Origin: Macrostomum hystrix
Lineage: Eukaryota; Animalia; Platyhelminthes
Direction of reading: 5' to 3'
Assembly (NCBI GenBank): GCA_950097015.1
Contig: CATNEN010000038.1
Location: 1,488,001 to 1,552,000, forward strand
Length of the DNA stretch: 64,000 bases
Numbering within the stretch: position 1 is the stretch's first letter; each line of letters opens with the position of its first letter. Under the pieces are notes generated by a model, which ran no database searches, had not been told where the DNA came from, and saw only the letters and a list, made by a program, of their open reading frames with translations. Of this stretch, positions 12,901 to 20,057 are shown piece after piece. The position numbers were made by a program, and so were the translations under genes.

Positions 12901-13699
12901 GATACTTCTACCAGATCCTCAGATACTTCTACCTGATCCCAAAATTATCCTACCTGATCCTCATTTTCTCCAACCCCCTAAGATTGTCTCAACTAATCTA
13001 GGATTATCTCAAAAGAACAGCTATACATTTCTCCACCAGATTTTTCTACTGAATCTCTAAACCGTCAAACACGTGACCCGTGAAGTCACGTGACCTCTGA
13101 CACCTCCCAGATCCTCACCTGACCCCCAGGTGCTGCCTGAGCCGCAGATCCCAGCACAGCTGAGCATCGAATCCCCTCCTATCAGTGAGGCCGAGTCGCC
13201 AGAACTTGAGCACGGCTTCCATGACGTCTCGCTCGCGAAATTTCAACTCCCCCAGCTGCAGCAGAGGCATTTCCCGCTGGCAGAACTCGGCATCAGTTAC
13301 TAGGCGAATGAGCAGCGGGCACAGACGGCTGACGTAATCCATAGTCTGTTCACGAACCAGCATGTTGCCGTGCAATTCCAGGAACAGTTCGGCCCGCTCC
13401 TGTACGCTAGCCTTCGAATCCAAGCACAGCACCAGTTGTAGCATGGCTCGGCAGTACAGGCTGCAGTCGGTTTCTAGGACAAAGATTTTCAAAGGTCGAT
13501 TCAACTGGTGCCGCCTCCTTCTGGCCAGGGTGGTGAGCAGGTGTCTTTGATCACCTGAGCCAACAATGAGCATGGTCTCAGCTGGTTGAGCAGCTGTGCC
13601 AGAGTTTGCATCCAGCCAGACCTGTTGCAGATCCAAAGCAGGACTGAAGCCCCACCAGGTGATGCTGCCTAAGCCGCTTTCAATACTTTGACTGTCCAT
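9946..13699 (-). CDS. DNAAF3: Dynein axonemal assembly factor 3 (PF22), 4 exons
   Basis: Exons 13699-13119, 12328-11814, 10620-10425, 10099-9946 join in frame. GLGSITWWGFSPALDL, LFLELHGN, LKFRERD, WDLRLRQHLGVRYD..DWD, RGYWGDIVCSPY, VTFLP. AATAAA (minus) near 9815. Confidence 0.93.
10225..10400 (-). mobile_element. SINE family B copy in DNAAF3 intron 3
   Basis: ggcgtaaattgcacgacaagcc..ccgcggctgcgccccaaat..ggcctcgccg..gaatcga, homologous to 44193-44557. Confidence 0.8.
10757..11710. repeat. Minisatellite, 31-bp unit GATGATCCTTCATGGGGCCTGAACCTCTCAT (DNAAF3 intron 2)
   Basis: About 30 near-identical tandem units. Confidence 0.97.
12350..12965. repeat. Minisatellite, 21-bp unit CCTGATCCTCAGATTCTTCTA (DNAAF3 intron 1)
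   Basis: About 28 tandem units. Produces the spurious ESEDQV ORF extension. Confidence 0.95.
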
Positions 13700-13964: not shown

Positions 13965-14250
13965 CCCACATAGGTCACTCAGATCCTACTGAGGCCACTC
14001 AGATCCCACTGAGGTCACTCTGATCCTACTGAGGTCACTCTGATACCACTGAGGTCACTCTGATCCCACTGAGGTCACTCTGATCCCACTGAGGTCACTC
14101 TGATCCCACTGAGGTCACTCTGAACCCGGTTTCGGCGGCGCCACCCTGATCCCACTGAAAGCATTCAGACCCCACTGAGGCCACCGGCCTGATCCCACTG
14201 AGGCCACTCTGATCCCACTGAGGCCACTTGGATCCCACATAGGTCACTCT
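13965..14250. repeat. Minisatellite, 20-bp unit GATCCCACTGAGGTCACTCT
   Basis: About 13 units starting immediately after the stop codon of the Sam50-like gene. Confidence 0.9.
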
Positions 14251-14254
14251 AAAC

Positions 14255-17200
14255 CTAGTACTCAGCCAGCAGGGTCACAGAGAGTCCAGCCTGAGCAGCA
14301 TCCGTGGCAAACTTGGACAAAGGTGGCCAGCACAAATTCACTTCCAGACGCGCTGGTCCGATGTCCTCGGCTATCGAAGGTCCAGCAGCTGCGGGCAGGG
14401 GACAGGCCAGGCCGACGCCGCGACCGAGGCCGAGGCCGACGCCGGCATCATCGGAGTCGACAATGCCGGCGTCGACAAAGGCGCGCAGGCGAAGACTCGG
14501 CGGCAGGCAGCGAGCAAGCAGCATCGGCGGCGCCGCCGAAACCTCCAGGCCGACGGACAGCCGGGTGAAGCCGCCGAGGTAGCGCAGGCCAAAGAATTGG
14601 CGACAGTCGCCAGCGCCCCAGTCCGCTAGCGGGCCGGGATGGCTGGGGCCGGCTCGGTTGGGCGCGAAACCGCGAACGCCTGCGGTGGGAAGTTGACAGT
14701 TCACAGTTAACAAGAAACTGACAGGTGAGATTGACAGGTGAGATTTTGATACTGAGAGGTGACAGGTGACAGGTAAGAGTCTCAGTGACTCTGAACCTCA
14801 ACTCATTGGGTGGTGACTGAGTCCCACCAGTCTGACAGGTGACACTATGATACTCACAGGGAAAGTTATGAAACAGACAGGTGAGACTATGAGACTAACG
14901 GGTGAGATTATGAGTGACAGGTGGGACTATGAGACTGACACGTGAGATAATGATACTGACAGGTGAGATGACGAGAGTGACAGGTGACACTATAATACTG
15001 ACACGTGAGATAATGAGACTGACAGGTGAGATGACGAGAGTGACAGGTGAGACTATGATACTAACGGGTGAGATTATGAGAGTGACAGGTGGGACTATGA
15101 GACTGACACGTGAGATAATGAGACTGACAGGTGAGATGACGAGAGTGACAGGTGAGATGACGAGAGTGACAGGTGAGACTATAATACTGACACGTGAGAT
15201 AATGAGACTGACAGGTGAGATGACGAGAGTGACAGGTGAGACTATGATACTAACGGGTGAGATGACGAGAGTGACACGTGGGACTATGAGACTGACACGT
15301 GAGATAATGAGACTGACAGGTGAGATGACGAGAGTGACAGGTGAGACTACGATACTGACACGTGAGATGAGGAGACTGACAGGTAGACTATGAGAGTTAC
15401 AGATGAGACTATGAGACTACCCTTAACACGAAAGACGGTATCAGAAGTGTGTTAATACCCTAAATAATGATGAATATTTTACCAGCCACAGCTCCGCCGA
15501 ATGGAAACCGATCCTCAAACGGAGTCAAATGGTCGGCGCCGAAGCACTTGTTGAAGTCGAATCGAAGGCCAAGCGATGGCGAGCAATGGCCCAGTAGAGA
15601 CTGCAGTGGGAGGCGCCAAACTATCTAGAATGCAAATATGGAGCAGTTTGAGTCAATTGGTGGATCAACAGTAGGAATACCAAGCCATTTTGCAGCCTGT
15701 TTTTATACCTGGGGGGTGAGAGTCTCCCTTCCTGACAAATTTTAGACAATAATCAGGCCACCAACTCTTCAGACCGTCGAGATATTCAACGGTTCTAGCC
15801 GAAGGTCAGATTTTCCCCCAAAAGAGCAAGTGTATTTCAGTGCCTTGCCAGGCCTTCAAAATTGATCAGCATGTCACACGAACGTGCCTGCATCATCTCC
15901 GTCTTCGGTGGTCACCCGCCTTGATCTTGACGGAGCTGCTGTACATTCAACAAGTGACACCAGCCGACTATGGACACCCTGATGCAAATTTCTCTCTTTT
16001 CGGCTGATCAAGTCTCAATATGGGACGAAGCTTAACAACAGGACCTTCGCCTAGTCTGTCAACCAATCAGTCACCACCCCGAAGCCGTCAGCACCGTCAG
16101 CAGGGTGCCTCCAGCTGGCTACGGAGTCTCTATAGCTAATTTCTCTACTTTCGCTGATCAAGCCTCGATATTGGACTACACTTAACTACTGCTTCTTGAA
16201 GGTCCAGCAGCTCCGTCTAGATAAAGGTCGGTGAGCACAGAAGTCGGAGATGATGCAGGCGCTTGACGCTTGCTTTGAAGGCCTGGCATGGCCTTTGGGT
16301 GCAGCGCAATTAATTTTCAGGGGGCCCCTTTGTAGTTCGACTGTTGATTGATACCTTACAGTCAGTAAAGTAGGTATAGTCTGAACTCACAGGCCAACTC
16401 ACCTGAGCTGTAGTCCGATGACTCAGCACCAGGCCCAGCAGAAGCTGGCCATTGTTCTGACCTGGCCGAGCTTCAAAAGCGACAAGCTCGTTGCTGACTC
16501 GAATCAACCAGCCGAGACTGGGCACCGCAGGGCAGTCCCGGCTGTCCCACTCCGAGCTGTGACGCAGCGACAGGCGCCAGGCTTCGGGCAGTTCAACAAC
16601 TTCTTCTTCCGGATTCGAAGCTGCGACGATGGCAGCGACGGCTTCCTCGGGAGTCAATGCCAACCGGCGTAGAGAGCCGTCCAGCAGTAGGGAATGGCGG
16701 TGGCGGATGCGGCGGAGGTCGGAAGAGCGCGCCGCGGGAGTCGGGTCCGCATAGCGGAGGCCGCAGAAGCTGTGCCGGCTGCGGTTCTGGGAGGAATTTT
16801 CCGTGTGGGACATTTGAACTAATAAAATGACTGGCAAATAATCCTATCTGTTAGCAAGTTTGCAACTTATCTTTTTAAGTAATAAGGCAAGCAATTGGTT
16901 TATTAATTTTTATTTTAACTAGCAAATGATTTCCAGATTTTCCATAGAAGATGGCAGCATAAGCAGTCCAACTGAACCAATCTGAACCAAGAAAAGCGTT
17001 TGAGTAGTCATAGATATGCTTGAGTAGTCAGAAAAGCGTTTCAGTAGTCAGAGAAGCGCTTGAGTAGTCAGAGAAGGGCTTGAGTAGTCAGAGAAGGGCT
17101 TGAGTAGTCAGAGAAGTGCTTGAGTAGTCAGAGAAGTGCTTGAGTAGTCAGAGAAGTGCTTGAGTAGTCAGAGAAGGGCTTGAGTAGTCAGAGAAGGGCT

Positions 17201-18437
17201 TGAGTAGTCAGAGAAGCGTTTGAGTAGTCAGAAAAGCGTTTGAGCAGTCCGTGAAGCGTTTCAGTCATCAGAGAAGCGTTTGAGTAGTCAGAGAAGCGTT
17301 TGAGCTGTCAGAGAAGTGCTTGAGTAGTCAGAGAAGTGCTTGAGTAGTCAGAGAAGCGTATGAGCAGTCAGAGAAGCGTTTTAGTCAATAGAGAAGCGTA
17401 TGAGCAGTCAGAGAAGCGTTTTAGTCATCAGAGAAGCGTTTGAGCAGTCAGAGAAGCGTTTTAGTCATCAGAGAAGCGTTTGAGCAGTCAGAATAAGTGC
17501 TTGAGTAGTCAGAGAAGTGCTTGAGTAGTCAGAGAAGTTCTTGAGTAGTCAGAGAAGTTCTTGAGTAGTCAGAGAAGTGCTTGAGTTTTCAGAGAAGTGC
17601 TTGAGTTGTCAGAGAAGTGCTTGAGTAGTCAGAGAAGTTCTTGAGTAGTCAGAGAAGTGCTTGAGTAGTCAGAGAAGTTCTTGAGTAGTCAGAGAAGTGC
17701 TTGAGTAGTCAGAGAAGTGCTTGAGTTGTCAGAGAAGTGCTTGAGTAGTCAGAGAAGTTCTTGAGTAGTCAGAGAAGTGCTTGAGTTGTCAGAGATGTGC
17801 TTGAGTAGACAGAGAAGTGCTTGAGTTGTCAGAGAAGTGCTTGAGTTGTCAGAGATGTGCTTGAGTAGTCAGAGAAGTGCTTGAGTTGTCAGAGAAGTTC
17901 TTGAGTAGTCAGAGAAGTGCTTGAGTTGTCAGAGAAGTGCTTGAGTTGTCAGAGAAGTGCTTGAGTAGTCAGAGAAGTGCTTGAGTTGTCAGAGAAGTGC
18001 TTGAGTAGACAGAGAATCGTTTTCGTAGCCAGAGAAGCATCATTTTAGTAGTCTATTGCCTTGGACTGCAGGTGATAAAAGAGGCTGAGTCTACTTACCA
18101 GAACAGCAGCATAGTCTAACACTGTCCGATCCAGCCCTAGGCCAGCAACAAATCGCCAGTTAGCCAGCCAGCCAGGCCAGTTCCGAGCCTCCTGATTGGC
18201 CAGGTTGTAGATCAGAGGCGACTCGAGCCACACCCTGCCAGCCAGACTGTCCTGCTGACCAATCAGGGCGGTGGTCCACAGGCGCCACGGCCGATTCAGC
18301 TGCAGCCATCTGGACAGAGCAACGCCAGCAGCCAATTCAACAGTGGCTGCGCCGCCAGTTCCGCTGGCAGCAACTGCACCGCTGCGACAGGTCAAAGGCG
18401 GCGGTGGCTGCTGCTGCTGCTCCTGCTTCCGCTGCTG
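14255..18437 (-). CDS. Divergent Omp85/Sam50 (SAMM50-like) outer-membrane beta-barrel protein, 4 exons, no own ATG
   Basis: Exons 18437-18099, 16786-16403, 15600-15483, 14679-14255 splice (phases 0,0,1) into 421 codons plus stop. Motifs LSLRHSSEWDSRD..PSLG.LIRVSNEL, DRFPFGG..GVRGF, YLGG, FVDAG, GVGL, ARLEVNLC.P and a terminal aromatic residue match the order of Sam50/BamA barrel motifs. Confidence 0.8.
14830..15415. repeat. Minisatellite, 21-bp unit GAGACTGACAGGTGAGATGAC-like (Sam50-like intron 3)
   Basis: About 27 degenerate tandem units. Confidence 0.9.
15669..16265. mobile_element. Unclassified dispersed repeat with internal inverted repeat (Sam50-like intron 2)
   Basis: The start cagtagga.tac.aagccat.ttgc.gcc.gtttttatacc is shared with ~42510. 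15865-15950 is an inverted copy of 16195-16262, and both match 42758-42845. Confidence 0.6.
16990..18035. repeat. Minisatellite, 20-bp unit TTGAGTAGTCAGAGAAGTGC (Sam50-like intron 1)
   Basis: About 50 tandem units. Confidence 0.97.
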
Positions 18438-18509
18438 CTGGAATTCAAAAAATAAATAAATACGACTTGATTATGTATGTTGGGATTTAAACTGGTGGGA
18501 TTAGGAATA

Positions 18510-18960
18510 TAAATGATAAGATTGGGATTGGAACGGATAGGATTGGTAATGGAACTAATGGGATTTGGAATGGAGCTGATGGGATTAGGATTGGAGCTCA
18601 TGAGATTGGGATTGGAGCTGATGGGATTGGGAATGGAACTAATGGGATTTGGATTGGAGCTGATGGGATTGGGAATGGAACTAATGGGATTTGGATTGGA
18701 GCTGATGGGATTAGGATTGGAGCTCATGAGATTGGGATTGGAGCTGATGGGATTGGGATTGGAGCTGATGGGATTGAAAATGGAGCTCATGGGATTGGGA
18801 TTGGAACTGATGGGATTGGGATTGGAGCTGATGGGATTGGGATTGGAGCTGATGGGATTGAAAATGGAGCTCATTGGATTGGGATGGGAACTGATGGGAT
18901 TGGGATTAAAAATGATCTCATTGTGATTTTAACTGATGGATTGGGATCAAAATGATGAGA
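18510..18960. repeat. Minisatellite, 21-bp unit GGGATTGGAGCTGATGGGATT
   Basis: About 20 units between TRMT10A and the Sam50-like gene. Confidence 0.93.
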
Positions 18961-19217: not shown

Positions 19218-20057
19218 TCACGCATTGTCAGTGCTAGACACTTCAGGCTTTACTTCAGCAGCAGCAGGTGCATCACCGTCATCATCTTGCACAATCTTTC
19301 GCTTGGGCACAACCGTGCGCAGCGCTTCACCCCAATCCCCGCAATTGGAATAGGTGAGCAGCAGATTAAACACCTGGTCTACTGTAAGCACTCTGCGGGA
19401 GTTCAGACGAATGTGTTGCGCGATGGGCAGCTGAGCGGTGCGCAAGCCAAGGGTTTTGGCCAGCTGGTAGCAATGACTGGGATAATGGTTGTGATCGACC
19501 AGGCCGCCAATAATGTACACGCAGTCGTCACTCAGAGTATCCAAAATAGTTTCAGATTCGCTGCACAGATAAACTAATTGTTCGCGCGGAAACAAACTCA
19601 GGTAAGACTCTTCGCGCCAATGCAAATCCCAATTTAGATAATCGTTGGAGCCGATGCCTTTCAGTTTTTCTAACAGTTTTCCGCCCAAGTCTGTGACATA
19701 GAGCTGCATGGGAGACGAGCTGCGCCTATTGTAACCATAGCAATGCTGCAGCTGGTTGAACAGCTTGCAAACATCTCCAATAGGCATGAGCGAGTCGAAT
19801 GAGCAGTCAATGACAACCCTAACACGGCAGGCACTGTCGCTCATACTATTGGCTGCAGCTTTCGTCAGCCGTTTGCCTTTCCGCTGCGGTTTCTGGCCAG
19901 ATTCCTTCAGCTGCTGCCTCTTGGCTTTACGGAGGGCCTTGACTATCTCACGCTTCTTGAGCTTCTTCTGAGCTCGCTTTGACAACGGCTTAGCCTGCTC
20001 TGCGAGCTCTGAGCTAGGGTCTGACTGTGCCATGGCACTGTCTGATTGGTCTGACAT
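19218..20057 (-). CDS. TRMT10A: tRNA (guanine-N1)-methyltransferase Trm10, intronless CDS
   Basis: VIDCSFDSLM, QLQHCYGYNRR, LVYLCSES, YIIGGLVDHN, AQLPI, RRVLTVDQVF, W.EAL..VVPKRK. AATAAA (minus) near 19175. Confidence 0.93.
   Translation of the reverse strand: MSDQSDSAMAQSDPSSELAEQAKPLSKRAQKKLKKREIVKALRKAKRQQLKESGQKPQRKGKRLTKAAANSMSDSACRVRVVIDCSFDSLMPIGDVCKLFNQLQHCYGYNRRSSSPMQLYVTDLGGKLLEKLKGIGSNDYLNWDLHWREESYLSLFPREQLVYLCSESETILDTLSDDCVYIIGGLVDHNHYPSHCYQLAKTLGLRTAQLPIAQHIRLNSRRVLTVDQVFNLLLTYSNCGDWGEALRTVVPKRKIVQDDDGDAPAAAEVKPEVSSTDNA

What the first reader, a model, noticed from the sequence alone, without database searches (positions are those of the whole stretch)
14255..18437. Hidden, POTRA-less, highly divergent Omp85/Sam50 barrel gene with a BamA-like FVDAG motif
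Seen: four minus-strand exons, separated by minisatellite- or repeat-filled introns, splice into one 421-codon ORF. It carries the Omp85 hallmarks in the correct order: DSRD..P..G, DRF..GG..VRGF, YLGG, FVDAG, G.GL, ARLE.N..P and a terminal aromatic residue. Known: animal Sam50 has one N-terminal POTRA domain and usually F-x-N-x-G at the position where BamA/TamA have F-x-D-x-G. Inferred: the barrel seems to start right after a 14-residue Q/P leader, so POTRA appears absent. This could be a second, specialised mitochondrial Omp85 paralog in an animal, a family normally single-copy in metazoans.
Basis: partly seen in the sequence, partly recalled or inferred. Interest (0 to 1): 0.85.

Follow-up and report, generated by a model that had tools for sequence, protein, structure and literature searches.

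The report
POTRA-less second Sam50 barrel in flatworm
The flatworm Macrostomum hystrix has, besides its normal mitochondrial Sam50, a second, very divergent copy that lacks the POTRA-coding first exon and any start codon of its own, so it most likely takes its AUG from the trans-spliced leader.

Summary
Four minus-strand exons (18437-18099, 16786-16403, 15624-15483, 14679-14255) with GT-AG introns give one open frame of 429 codons.

The genome is Macrostomum hystrix. The only relative found in about 15 billion proteins is an unnamed "hypothetical, partial" protein of M. lignano, 52-71% identical exon by exon. That full-length protein passes Pfam Omp85 (46 bits). Its ESM Atlas model matches Sam50 barrels (TM 0.75) over nearly its whole length.

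A canonical Sam50 with a POTRA exon and F-A-N-A-G lies on another contig, so the window gene is a true second copy. Its first exon aligns end to end with canonical exon 2 and shares the following intron position. It is therefore a DNA-level Sam50 duplicate that lacks exon 1.

The frame has no N-terminal Met in either species. It starts at a TTCCAG acceptor. The leader ends in ATG.

AlphaFold failed. The M. hystrix exons were never joined; the M. lignano protein served as full-length proxy. The scan had noted the missing start codon on this window, but not the Omp85 gene.

The parts
18438..18443 (-). 5' splice acceptor TTCCAG, followed by two further in-frame CAGs. Proposed spliced-leader trans-splice site.
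   Evidence: Sequence. It fits the [T/C]TNCAG motif that PMC8629364 found enriched at M. lignano trans-splice sites. No in-frame ATG lies between it and the upstream TAA at 18473-18471.
18099..18437 (-). Exon A, 113 codons: a Q/P-rich leader (14 aa), then the first barrel strands. It contains no Met.
   Evidence: 52% identical to P0002 residues 12-98. Aligns end to end with canonical Sam50 exon 2 (BLASTP E 0.034). No alignment to the canonical POTRA exon.
16787..18098 (-). Intron 1 (GTAAGT...CCCAG) with a 20-nt x 51 minisatellite at 17000-18016. Same position and phase as intron 2 of the canonical Sam50 gene.
   Evidence: The M. lignano fragment model P0004 starts exactly at the exon B equivalent.
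16403..16786 (-). Exon B, 128 codons, with WDSRDCPAVPSLG at 16549-16511.
   Evidence: Pfam Omp85 E 0.006, profile positions 70-145. Match to P0002 at E 3e-39.
15625..16402 (-). Intron 2 (GTGAGT...TCTAG), carrying a foldback-like repeat. The canonical gene has no intron at this position.
15483..15624 (-). Exon C, 47 codons plus 1 nt, with EDRFPFGG at 15516-15493.
   Evidence: 70% identical to P0002 in the alignment; match to P0002 at E 5.9e-16, 71% identity.
14680..15482 (-). Intron 3 (GTAAAA...CGCAG, phase 1) with a 21-nt x 28 minisatellite. The canonical gene has no intron at this position.
14255..14679 (-). Exon D: VRGF (14677-14666), RYLGG, FVDAG (14479-14465), ARLEVNLCWPP, a beta-signal-like QAGLSVTL (14293-14270), terminal Y and the TAG stop.
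   Evidence: Pfam Omp85 E 0.0044, profile positions 207-294. phmmer against 1.84e9 representatives gave one hit, P0001, at 1.3e-29. Coordinates.

Best explanation
This is a real, conserved, intron-containing gene of the flatworm Macrostomum hystrix. It encodes a very divergent, POTRA-less paralog of the mitochondrial beta-barrel insertase Sam50 (Omp85 superfamily).

Origin (inferred from gene structure): it arose as a DNA-level duplicate of the Sam50 gene that lacks exon 1, which codes for the leader and the POTRA domain. The former phase-0 acceptor of exon 2 has no upstream donor in cis, so it is used for spliced-leader trans-splicing. The leader ends in AUG, and that AUG supplies the only available start codon. 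The product would be Met plus 429 residues, and nearly all of it is barrel.

Protein features (shown): it keeps the loop-6 VRGF motif, the F-x-D-x-G strand motif, a C-terminal Q-x-G-x-x-V-x-L segment and a terminal aromatic residue.

Likely function (inferred, not shown): the protein is imported and inserted into the mitochondrial outer membrane like other beta-barrels. There it works in or beside the SAM complex as a second Omp85 barrel, much as fungal Sam51 does.
For: Gene model. Every exon matches M. lignano P0002, and the matches break at the junctions.

Organism. G000 has 220,453,370 bases in 42 contigs, which is exactly the M. hystrix assembly in Table 1 of PMC10468722.

Family. The ortholog scores 46.2 bits on PF01103, E 5.6e-12. 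Its ESM Atlas model (pTM 0.71) has Sam50 clusters as nearest structural neighbours (TM 0.75 and 0.73), then BamA and TamA, with 331 of 386 residues aligned. Its first 120 residues resemble barrel walls rather than a POTRA fold.

Paralogy. The only other locus in the genome that matches either PF01103 or P0002 is the canonical Sam50 on C29. Identity to it is 36% over 121 aa, E 2e-13.

Shared intron. The exons end ..LDYAAVL|NRSRHSFCG in the paralog and ..VDYTWAAVK|ESHSSCFAS in the canonical gene, both in phase 0.

POTRA. Canonical exon 1 hits PF07244 (E 0.017). The paralog gives no POTRA hit. It is 83 residues shorter before the conserved IG..DS block.

Start codon. Exons A-C contain no Met, and the one Met in exon D is at a different position from the M. 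lignano Met. Three M. lignano models start at the same spot without a Met. The acceptor TTCCAG fits the trans-splice motif. The leader ends in ATG. The genome holds 19 exact copies of the leader's 3' end plus its donor. Flatworm leader AUGs are known to act as initiators (PMC9851317).

Constraint. The frame is intact and the motifs are kept in two Macrostomum species and in both M. lignano copies.
Against:
- The M. hystrix exons taken singly stay below the Pfam cut-off (16.6 and 17.0 bits against 24). The joined protein was not searched.
- Both AlphaFold2 runs gave unusable models (pLDDT 31 and 34). The fold therefore rests on the Atlas ESMFold model, which is a lead and not a test, and the strands were not counted.
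- No phylogeny could be built, because no Sam50 sequences with usable ids were obtained.
- Location, partners and activity are untested.
- The alignment of exon A with canonical exon 2 is weak on its own (E 0.034).
Confidence: 0.8

Rival explanations
1. The gene model is incomplete at its 5' end. One or more cis-spliced upstream exons supply the ATG and perhaps a POTRA domain, which would make this an ordinary-architecture second Sam50.
For: Exon A has no ATG and starts at an acceptor. The M. lignano models are flagged 'partial'. There is no RNA evidence for M. hystrix.
Against: Only 780 nt separate the acceptor from the stop of the co-oriented TRMT10-like gene, and 438 nt of those are minisatellite. 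Reading those 780 nt, I saw no exon-like ATG-to-donor stretch. Three M. lignano models begin at the same residue. Exon A already covers the whole of canonical exon 2. The 386-residue ortholog aligns 331 residues to the barrel alone, which leaves no room for about 80 POTRA residues.
Confidence: 0.08
2. It is an ancient opisthokont Omp85 paralog, orthologous to fungal Sam51, that most animals lost. On this reading it is not a flatworm-specific duplicate of Sam50.
For: C. albicans has a second SAM-complex member, Sam51 (PMC5955198; listed among functionally distinct homologs in PMC4104836). The top Atlas hit by features is a 388-aa, Omp85-only cluster from Ascomycota.
Against: The paralog is more similar to the Sam50 of its own genome (54 bits) than that Sam50 is to a fungal Sam50 (40 bits). 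It shares an intron position with the canonical gene. No relative outside Macrostomum was found. These bit scores come from different programs, and evolutionary rates are unequal, so this argument is suggestive only.
Confidence: 0.05
3. It is a decaying, functionless duplicate (a transcribed pseudogene) whose frame is still open by chance.
For: Extreme divergence: no PDB Omp85 is detectable by sequence. It has lost a domain, has no start codon of its own, and its introns are full of repeats.
Against: The 429-codon frame is open in M. hystrix, and 385-386 codon frames are open in two M. lignano copies. Identity is 52-71% per exon, and VRGF, FVDAG and ARLE.N are kept. Splice sites are intact. 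The Met-less frame is conserved between species, which makes sense only if it is translated from an outside AUG.
Confidence: 0.05
4. It is a bacterial 'noNterm' Omp85 acquired by horizontal transfer, which would explain the BamA-like F-x-D-x-G.
For: FVDAG carries the D that I recall as typical of BamA (not tested here). POTRA-less Omp85 proteins exist in bacteria (PMC4104836).
Against: It has three spliceosomal introns, one of them shared with Sam50. No bacterial protein reached E 0.001 among 1.84e9 representatives. No relative was found in 185,579 prokaryotic genomes. The BamA model scores 27.7 bits on the paralog against 46.3 bits on a single canonical exon. The best non-self match in the genome is Sam50.
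Confidence: 0.02

Closest known systems
Canonical metazoan Sam50 (SAMM50), including the M. hystrix gene on contig C29 (L001)
   Same: Both belong to Omp85 (PF01103). The motifs come in the same order: DSRD..P..G, DRF..GG..(V/L)RGF, YLGG, F-x-(D/N)-x-G, AR(L/F)E.N, terminal aromatic. Identity is 36% over 121 aa. One intron position is shared. Sam50 clusters are the nearest structural neighbours of the ortholog's Atlas model.
   Different: The paralog has no exon 1, so it lacks POTRA and is about 83 residues shorter at the N-terminus. It has D instead of N in the F-x-N-x-G motif. It has two introns the canonical gene lacks, and it lacks one intron the canonical gene has. It has no start codon of its own. 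It is so divergent that fungal Sam50 structures are not detectable by sequence, whereas the canonical copy finds them at E 2.8e-9.
Fungal Sam51, the second Omp85-family member of the SAM complex in Candida albicans (Hewitt et al. 2012, as cited in PMC5955198)
   Same: It is a second mitochondrial Omp85 paralog that exists alongside Sam50 in a eukaryote. This is the closest functional precedent.
   Different: It occurs in fungi, not animals. The similarity argument and the shared intron favour an independent origin within flatworms.
POTRA-less Omp85 proteins: bacterial 'noNterm' Omp85 (PMC4104836; Leptospira, PMC11358297), plant Toc75-IV/P36/P39 (from my own knowledge), and engineered POTRA-deleted yeast Sam50 (Stroud 2011 as cited in PMC4104836; the 363-aa chain of PDB 7BTW)
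   Same: All are barrel-only. According to PMC4104836, yeast Sam50 without POTRA still binds and assembles substrates, so a barrel-only Sam50 can be active.
   Different: Those are bacterial, plastid or laboratory constructs. This one is a natural mitochondrial-type copy in an animal, and it was made by loss of an exon.
Flatworm 'slORFs': open reading frames started by the 3'-terminal AUG of the spliced leader (Cheng et al. 2006 as cited in PMC9851317)
   Same: The frame opens in phase directly after a trans-splice-type acceptor and has no AUG of its own.
   Different: Here the leader AUG would do more than start a gene. It would be what lets a 5'-truncated duplicate that has lost a whole domain be translated at all.

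Membership tests
Omp85 superfamily (Pfam PF01103) | Profile match above the curated cut-off (24 bits) | tested here: met
   The M. lignano ortholog P0001 scores 46.2 bits (E 5.6e-12, profile positions 74-304 of 325) and P0002 scores 45.4 bits. For the window itself only single exons were searched. Exon B scores 16.6 bits (profile 70-145) and exon D 17.0 bits (profile 207-294); the two hits are collinear but each is below the cut-off. The joined M. hystrix protein was not searched, by instruction.
Omp85 superfamily (Pfam PF01103) | Loop-6 (V/I)RG(F/Y) motif and the F/G-x-D/N-x-G strand motif, in that order | tested here: met
   GVRGF lies at 14677-14666 and AFVDAG at 14479-14465. Both are conserved in P0001 and P0002.
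Omp85 superfamily (Pfam PF01103) | 16-stranded beta-barrel fold | tested here: inconclusive
   The ESM Atlas model of P0002 (pTM 0.71) matches Sam50 clusters at TM 0.75 and 0.73, BamA at 0.71 and TamA at 0.69, with 331 residues aligned. My two AlphaFold2 runs failed (pLDDT 31 and 34), so there was no fold search against the PDB and the strands were not counted.
Mitochondrial Sam50 (canonical architecture) | One N-terminal POTRA domain | tested here: not met
   No POTRA family was found at E up to 10 on exon A or up to 1 on P0001 and P0002. Canonical exon 1, used as positive control, gives PF07244 at E 0.017. Exon A aligns to canonical exon 2 and not to exon 1. There are 51 residues, against 134 in the canonical gene, before the IG..DS block.
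Mitochondrial Sam50 (canonical architecture) | Descent from Sam50: nearest relative is Sam50, with shared gene structure | tested here: met
   The only other locus in the genome matching P0002 is canonical Sam50 (E 2.4e-6; BLASTP E 2e-13). One intron position and phase are shared. No formal phylogeny was possible.
Mitochondrial Sam50 (canonical architecture) | F-x-N-x-G at the strand motif | tested here: not met
   The paralog has FVDAG in both species. The canonical M. hystrix gene has AFANAG and yeast Sam50 has WFFNGG.
Mitochondrial Sam50 (canonical architecture) | [quoted passage not shown] | not testable with these tools
   The only indirect sign is a beta-signal-like QAGLSVTL plus a terminal Y. 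In M. lignano the polar position of that segment is V. Four Tom37/metaxin-like loci exist in the genome, which by itself tells nothing.
Bacterial BamA/TamA | Match to the BamA equivalog model (TIGR03303, cut-off 297 bits), several POTRA domains, intron-less bacterial gene | tested here: not met
   The score is 27.7 bits. There is no POTRA and there are three spliceosomal introns. No prokaryotic relative was found.
Fungal Sam51 | Orthology to the second SAM-complex Omp85 of Candida | not tested
   No Sam51 sequence or paper text could be obtained. The indirect similarity argument speaks against orthology.

The most novel reading that the evidence does not exclude
Spliced-leader trans-splicing with a terminal AUG rescued a 5'-truncated Sam50 duplicate. 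This created a natural barrel-only Sam50, which Macrostomum retains as a dedicated second barrel of the SAM complex. It could be a built-in partner or 'placeholder' barrel of the kind proposed for Sam50b and Mdm10 in yeast. If so, it would be the first animal with two functionally different mitochondrial Omp85 proteins, and a general route by which leader AUGs turn truncated duplicates into new domain architectures.
Probability: 0.2. Interest if true: 0.8.

Novelty: new variant of a known kind. Interest (0 to 1): 0.6.

Why it matters
A survey of eukaryotes found Sam50 to be single-copy in most genomes, with only lineage-specific exceptions in plants and fishes (PMC3273162). The role of its POTRA domain is still debated.

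This gene is a conserved, naturally POTRA-less Sam50 relative that coexists with the normal gene. It occurs in a genus that includes a tractable laboratory model, M. lignano, which from my own knowledge has transgenesis and RNAi. That offers a natural experiment on two questions: what an Omp85 barrel can do without POTRA, and whether animal mitochondria can use two different Omp85 barrels.

It is also a clean case of a gene that cannot be translated without the leader's AUG. It suggests a mechanism for how trans-splicing can keep 5'-truncated duplicates alive. In the databases the protein is only 'hypothetical, partial', or carries plainly wrong automatic names.

Tried and rejected
No run ids were available.
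Synteny and dN/dS could not be examined.
- Structure: two AlphaFold2 jobs gave pLDDT 31.0 and 34.2. The first used A2 (5 rows). The second used A3 (9 rows, including canonical Sam50 exons). Neither model is usable, so no fold search was run.
- Homolog collection for an alignment or tree: three homologous-protein searches returned only P0001. The queries were P0002, the A2 profile at E up to 10, and P0002 residues 155-386. No Sam50, Sam51 or BamA ids were obtained, so no phylogeny was built.
- PDB by sequence: neither P0001 nor the A2 profile finds any Omp85 chain.
- Prokaryotic genomes: the search for related loci could not use A2 and found no relative with P0002.
- Literature: no paper mentions Macrostomum together with Sam50, or the gene ids Mlig033198 and Mlig017139. 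No supplements are held for PMC8629364. The Sam51 paper is not held.
- Metaxin count: four Tom37-like loci. This is uninformative without further work.
- The bacterial promoter/terminator scan of the upstream spacer is irrelevant for a eukaryote.
All full-length analyses used the M. lignano proteins P0001 and P0002.
Full report
**The observation.** On the minus strand of 14255-18437 there are four exons: A 18437-18099, B 16786-16403, C 15624-15483 and D 14679-14255. The three introns are 1312, 778 and 803 nt long and have canonical GT...AG ends. Intron 1 carries a 20-nt x 51 minisatellite and intron 3 a 21-nt x 28 minisatellite. Intron 2 carries a diverged direct repeat between 69-nt inverted arms. 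The frame begins directly behind ...TTTTGAATTCCAG with 14 Q/P-rich codons. There is no ATG, and an in-frame TAA lies 12 codons further upstream.

**A note on method.** Wherever a full-length protein was needed I used the M. lignano ortholog returned by a search.

**The organism.** The window's assembly has 220,453,370 bases in 42 contigs. That is exactly the Macrostomum hystrix assembly in Table 1 of PMC10468722. Earlier notes of this scan name the same species.

**The gene is real and conserved.**
- phmmer of exon D against 1.84 billion representative proteins found a single protein, P0001 (E 1.3e-29, 67% identity).
- P0001 is PAA75954.1, 'hypothetical protein BOX15_Mlig033198g1, partial' of M. 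lignano. A second copy, P0002 (PAA90016.1), is 96% identical.
- Searching the M. hystrix genome with P0002 finds the four window exons (E 3e-22, 3e-39, 6e-16, 4e-35) and only one other place.
- The alignments break exactly at the proposed junctions.
- A fragmentary UniProt model, P0004, starts at the first residue of the exon B equivalent.
- Per-exon identity between the two species is 52-71%. The VRGF, FVDAG and ARLE.N blocks are conserved.
- An open frame that is kept in two species and in both M. lignano copies, with intact splice sites, argues for purifying selection.

**It is an Omp85 protein.**
- Taken singly, exons B and D give weak but collinear PF01103 hits: E 0.006 at profile 70-145 and E 0.0044 at profile 207-294.
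- The full-length ortholog passes the curated cut-off: 46.2 bits against 24, E 5.6e-12, profile 74-304 of 325.
- The ESM Atlas holds P0002 with an ESMFold model (pTM 0.71). Its nearest structural neighbours are an arthropod Sam50 cluster (TM 0.75, 331 residues aligned across 1-386), a fungal Sam50 cluster (0.73), BamA (0.71) and TamA (0.69).
- My own two AlphaFold2 runs on the very shallow alignments failed (pLDDT 31 and 34). The fold therefore rests on the Atlas model plus the profile match, and I could not count strands.

**It is a second copy, derived from Sam50.**
- The genome holds a canonical Sam50 on contig C29. Exon 1 has 99 codons with a POTRA-like match (PF07244, E 0.017). Exon 2 has 84 codons. 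Exon 3 scores 51.6 bits on Omp85. The last exon has YLGG, AFANAG, ARFELN and a terminal F.
- This is the only locus besides the window that matches either PF01103 or P0002.
- The paralog is 36% identical to canonical exon 3 over 121 residues (E 2e-13) and 30% identical to the last exon (E 6e-4).
- Paralog exon A aligns end to end with canonical exon 2. Both exons stop at the same place in phase 0 (..LDYAAVL| and ..VDYTWAAVK|), and the next exons start alike (NRSRHSFCG and ESHSSCFAS). A shared intron position rules out both a retrocopy and a bacterial import.
- The other introns differ. The paralog has two that the canonical gene lacks, and the canonical gene has one that the paralog lacks. The duplication is therefore not very recent.
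- The paralog is far more diverged than the canonical copy. Canonical exon 3 finds Thermothelomyces Sam50 in the PDB at E 2.8e-9. Neither the whole paralog nor its profile finds any Omp85 chain there.
- The BamA model TIGR03303 scores 27.7 bits on the paralog and 46.3 bits on a single canonical exon. The D of FVDAG is therefore no sign of bacterial affinity. Because the canonical copy (AFANAG) and yeast Sam50 (WFFNGG) carry N, the D is most simply a change that happened after the duplication.

**POTRA is absent.**
- No POTRA family appears on exon A at E up to 10, or on P0001 and P0002 at E up to 1.
- Exon A has no alignment to canonical exon 1.
- Before the conserved IG..DS block the paralog has 51 residues, while the canonical protein has 134 (99 plus 35). 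The 83-residue difference is the size of a POTRA domain, whose Pfam model has 79 positions.
- The first 120 residues of P0002 resemble outer-membrane barrel walls in the Atlas. This is a soft lead only.

**How it gets a start codon.**
- Exons A, B and C contain no Met at all. The single Met in exon D and the single Met in the M. lignano proteins lie at different positions. Neither species can therefore start translation of the barrel from within the gene.
- Three M. lignano models (P0001, P0002, P0003) begin at the same Q/P-rich residues without a Met.
- The M. lignano spliced leader ends in ATG (PMC8629364), and the M. hystrix paper says the same of its leader.
- The leader's 3' end with its GTAAG donor occurs 19 times exactly in this genome.
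- The acceptor TTCCAG fits the [T/C]TNCAG motif enriched at M. lignano trans-splice sites.
- Joining ...ATG to CAG CAG CGG is in frame, and so are the two following CAG acceptors.
- Flatworm leader AUGs are documented initiators (PMC9851317, citing Cheng et al. 2006).
- The co-oriented upstream gene, a TRMT10-type tRNA m1G methyltransferase, ends 780 nt away, or about 340 nt once the minisatellite is subtracted. That is within the 1-kb operon criterion of PMC8629364.

**Most likely history and working.** Inferred: a Sam50 duplicate without exon 1 kept the phase-0 acceptor of exon 2. With no donor upstream in cis, such an acceptor is taken by the trans-splicing machinery (the principle is cited in PMC8629364). 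The leader's AUG then restored a translatable frame. Shown: the product keeps the loop-6 VRGF motif, the F-x-D-x-G motif, a C-terminal Q-x-G-x-x-V-x-L segment resembling the mitochondrial beta-signal (from my own knowledge of that signal), and a terminal Tyr. Inferred, not shown: it is inserted into the mitochondrial outer membrane and acts in or beside the SAM complex. A barrel-only Sam50 can be active. Yeast Sam50 without POTRA still assembles substrates (Stroud 2011 as cited in PMC4104836), and a 363-residue Sam50 chain was solved within SAM complexes (7BTW).

**Comparison with what is known.** A survey of eukaryotes found Sam50 single-copy in most genomes, with lineage-specific exceptions in plants and fishes (PMC3273162). 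The closest precedent is Sam51, an additional SAM-complex member of Candida albicans (PMC5955198). Barrel-only 'noNterm' Omp85 proteins are known in bacteria (PMC4104836). I found no paper on a second or POTRA-less Sam50 in flatworms. The protein fails the canonical Sam50 architecture test, since it has no POTRA and has D in place of N. It meets the Omp85 tests and shows descent from Sam50. I file it as a new variant of a known kind.

**Limits.** There is no transcript evidence in M. hystrix, no phylogeny, no usable structure model of my own, no dN/dS, and no data on location or function. The absence of orthologs outside Macrostomum rests on searches that also failed to reach ordinary Sam50 proteins. 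A similarly diverged copy in other flatworms cannot be excluded.

Noticed in passing
G000 C1, C15, C17, C42 (loci L008-L015) and C39:12.667-12.753 Mb: The 3' end of the spliced leader with its donor (GACTCAATTTATTGCATG|GTAAG) occurs 19 times exactly, in arrays spaced about 11.6 kb. A 3-mismatch variant (GACTCTCTTTTTTGCATG|GTAAG) forms a tandem array of more than 70 copies with a period of about 927 nt on C39. This may be a second leader class that also ends in ATG. Earlier notes of this scan describe leader genes in the rDNA spacer and in a 5S/SL array.
   Followed up: no
window 18400-18422 (-) and L001:3025-3047: The Q/P-rich start of paralog exon A and the proposed start of the last canonical Sam50 exon share an identical 23-nt word, GAGCAGCAGCAGCAGCCACCGCC. 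This could be chance in CAG-rich sequence or a trace of common origin. The word occurs only once in the window.
   Followed up: partly
window 19218-20057 (-) and 13115-13699 (-): The neighbours on the same strand are a single-exon TRMT10-type tRNA m1G methyltransferase (PF01746, E 9e-28) upstream and the first exon of a DUF4470/DUF4471 (DNAAF3-like) gene downstream. The spacers are 780 and 555 nt, and about half of each is minisatellite. This is an operon-like arrangement by the criteria used for M. lignano.
   Followed up: partly
proteins P0003 and P0004 (UniProt A0A1I8H615, A0A1I8ITC6): Two fragmentary M. lignano models in the same 90% cluster carry the automatic names 'Ricin B-type lectin domain-containing protein' and 'Calpain catalytic domain-containing protein'. 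Those names do not fit an Omp85 barrel. They are probably mis-named or chimeric models.
   Followed up: no
window 15886-15954 / 16192-16260 (intron 2): 69-nt inverted arms, 86% complementary, enclose a twice-repeated unit of about 86 nt. This is a foldback or MITE-like insertion in an intron that the canonical Sam50 gene does not have.
   Followed up: no
window 13972-14250, 14832-15418, 17000-18016, 18520-18957; L001 about 1085-1200: Minisatellites with 20-21-nt units fill the introns and spacers of this gene. A similar one sits in intron 2 of the canonical Sam50 gene. This seems to be a general habit of the genome.
   Followed up: no
G000 C11:1516889-1517275, C38:17375501-17375827, C34:374288-374530, C30:3072227-3072481: Four loci match the Tom37/metaxin N-terminal family PF10568. 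I did not work out whether this number includes an extra metaxin that might partner the second Omp85.
   Followed up: no
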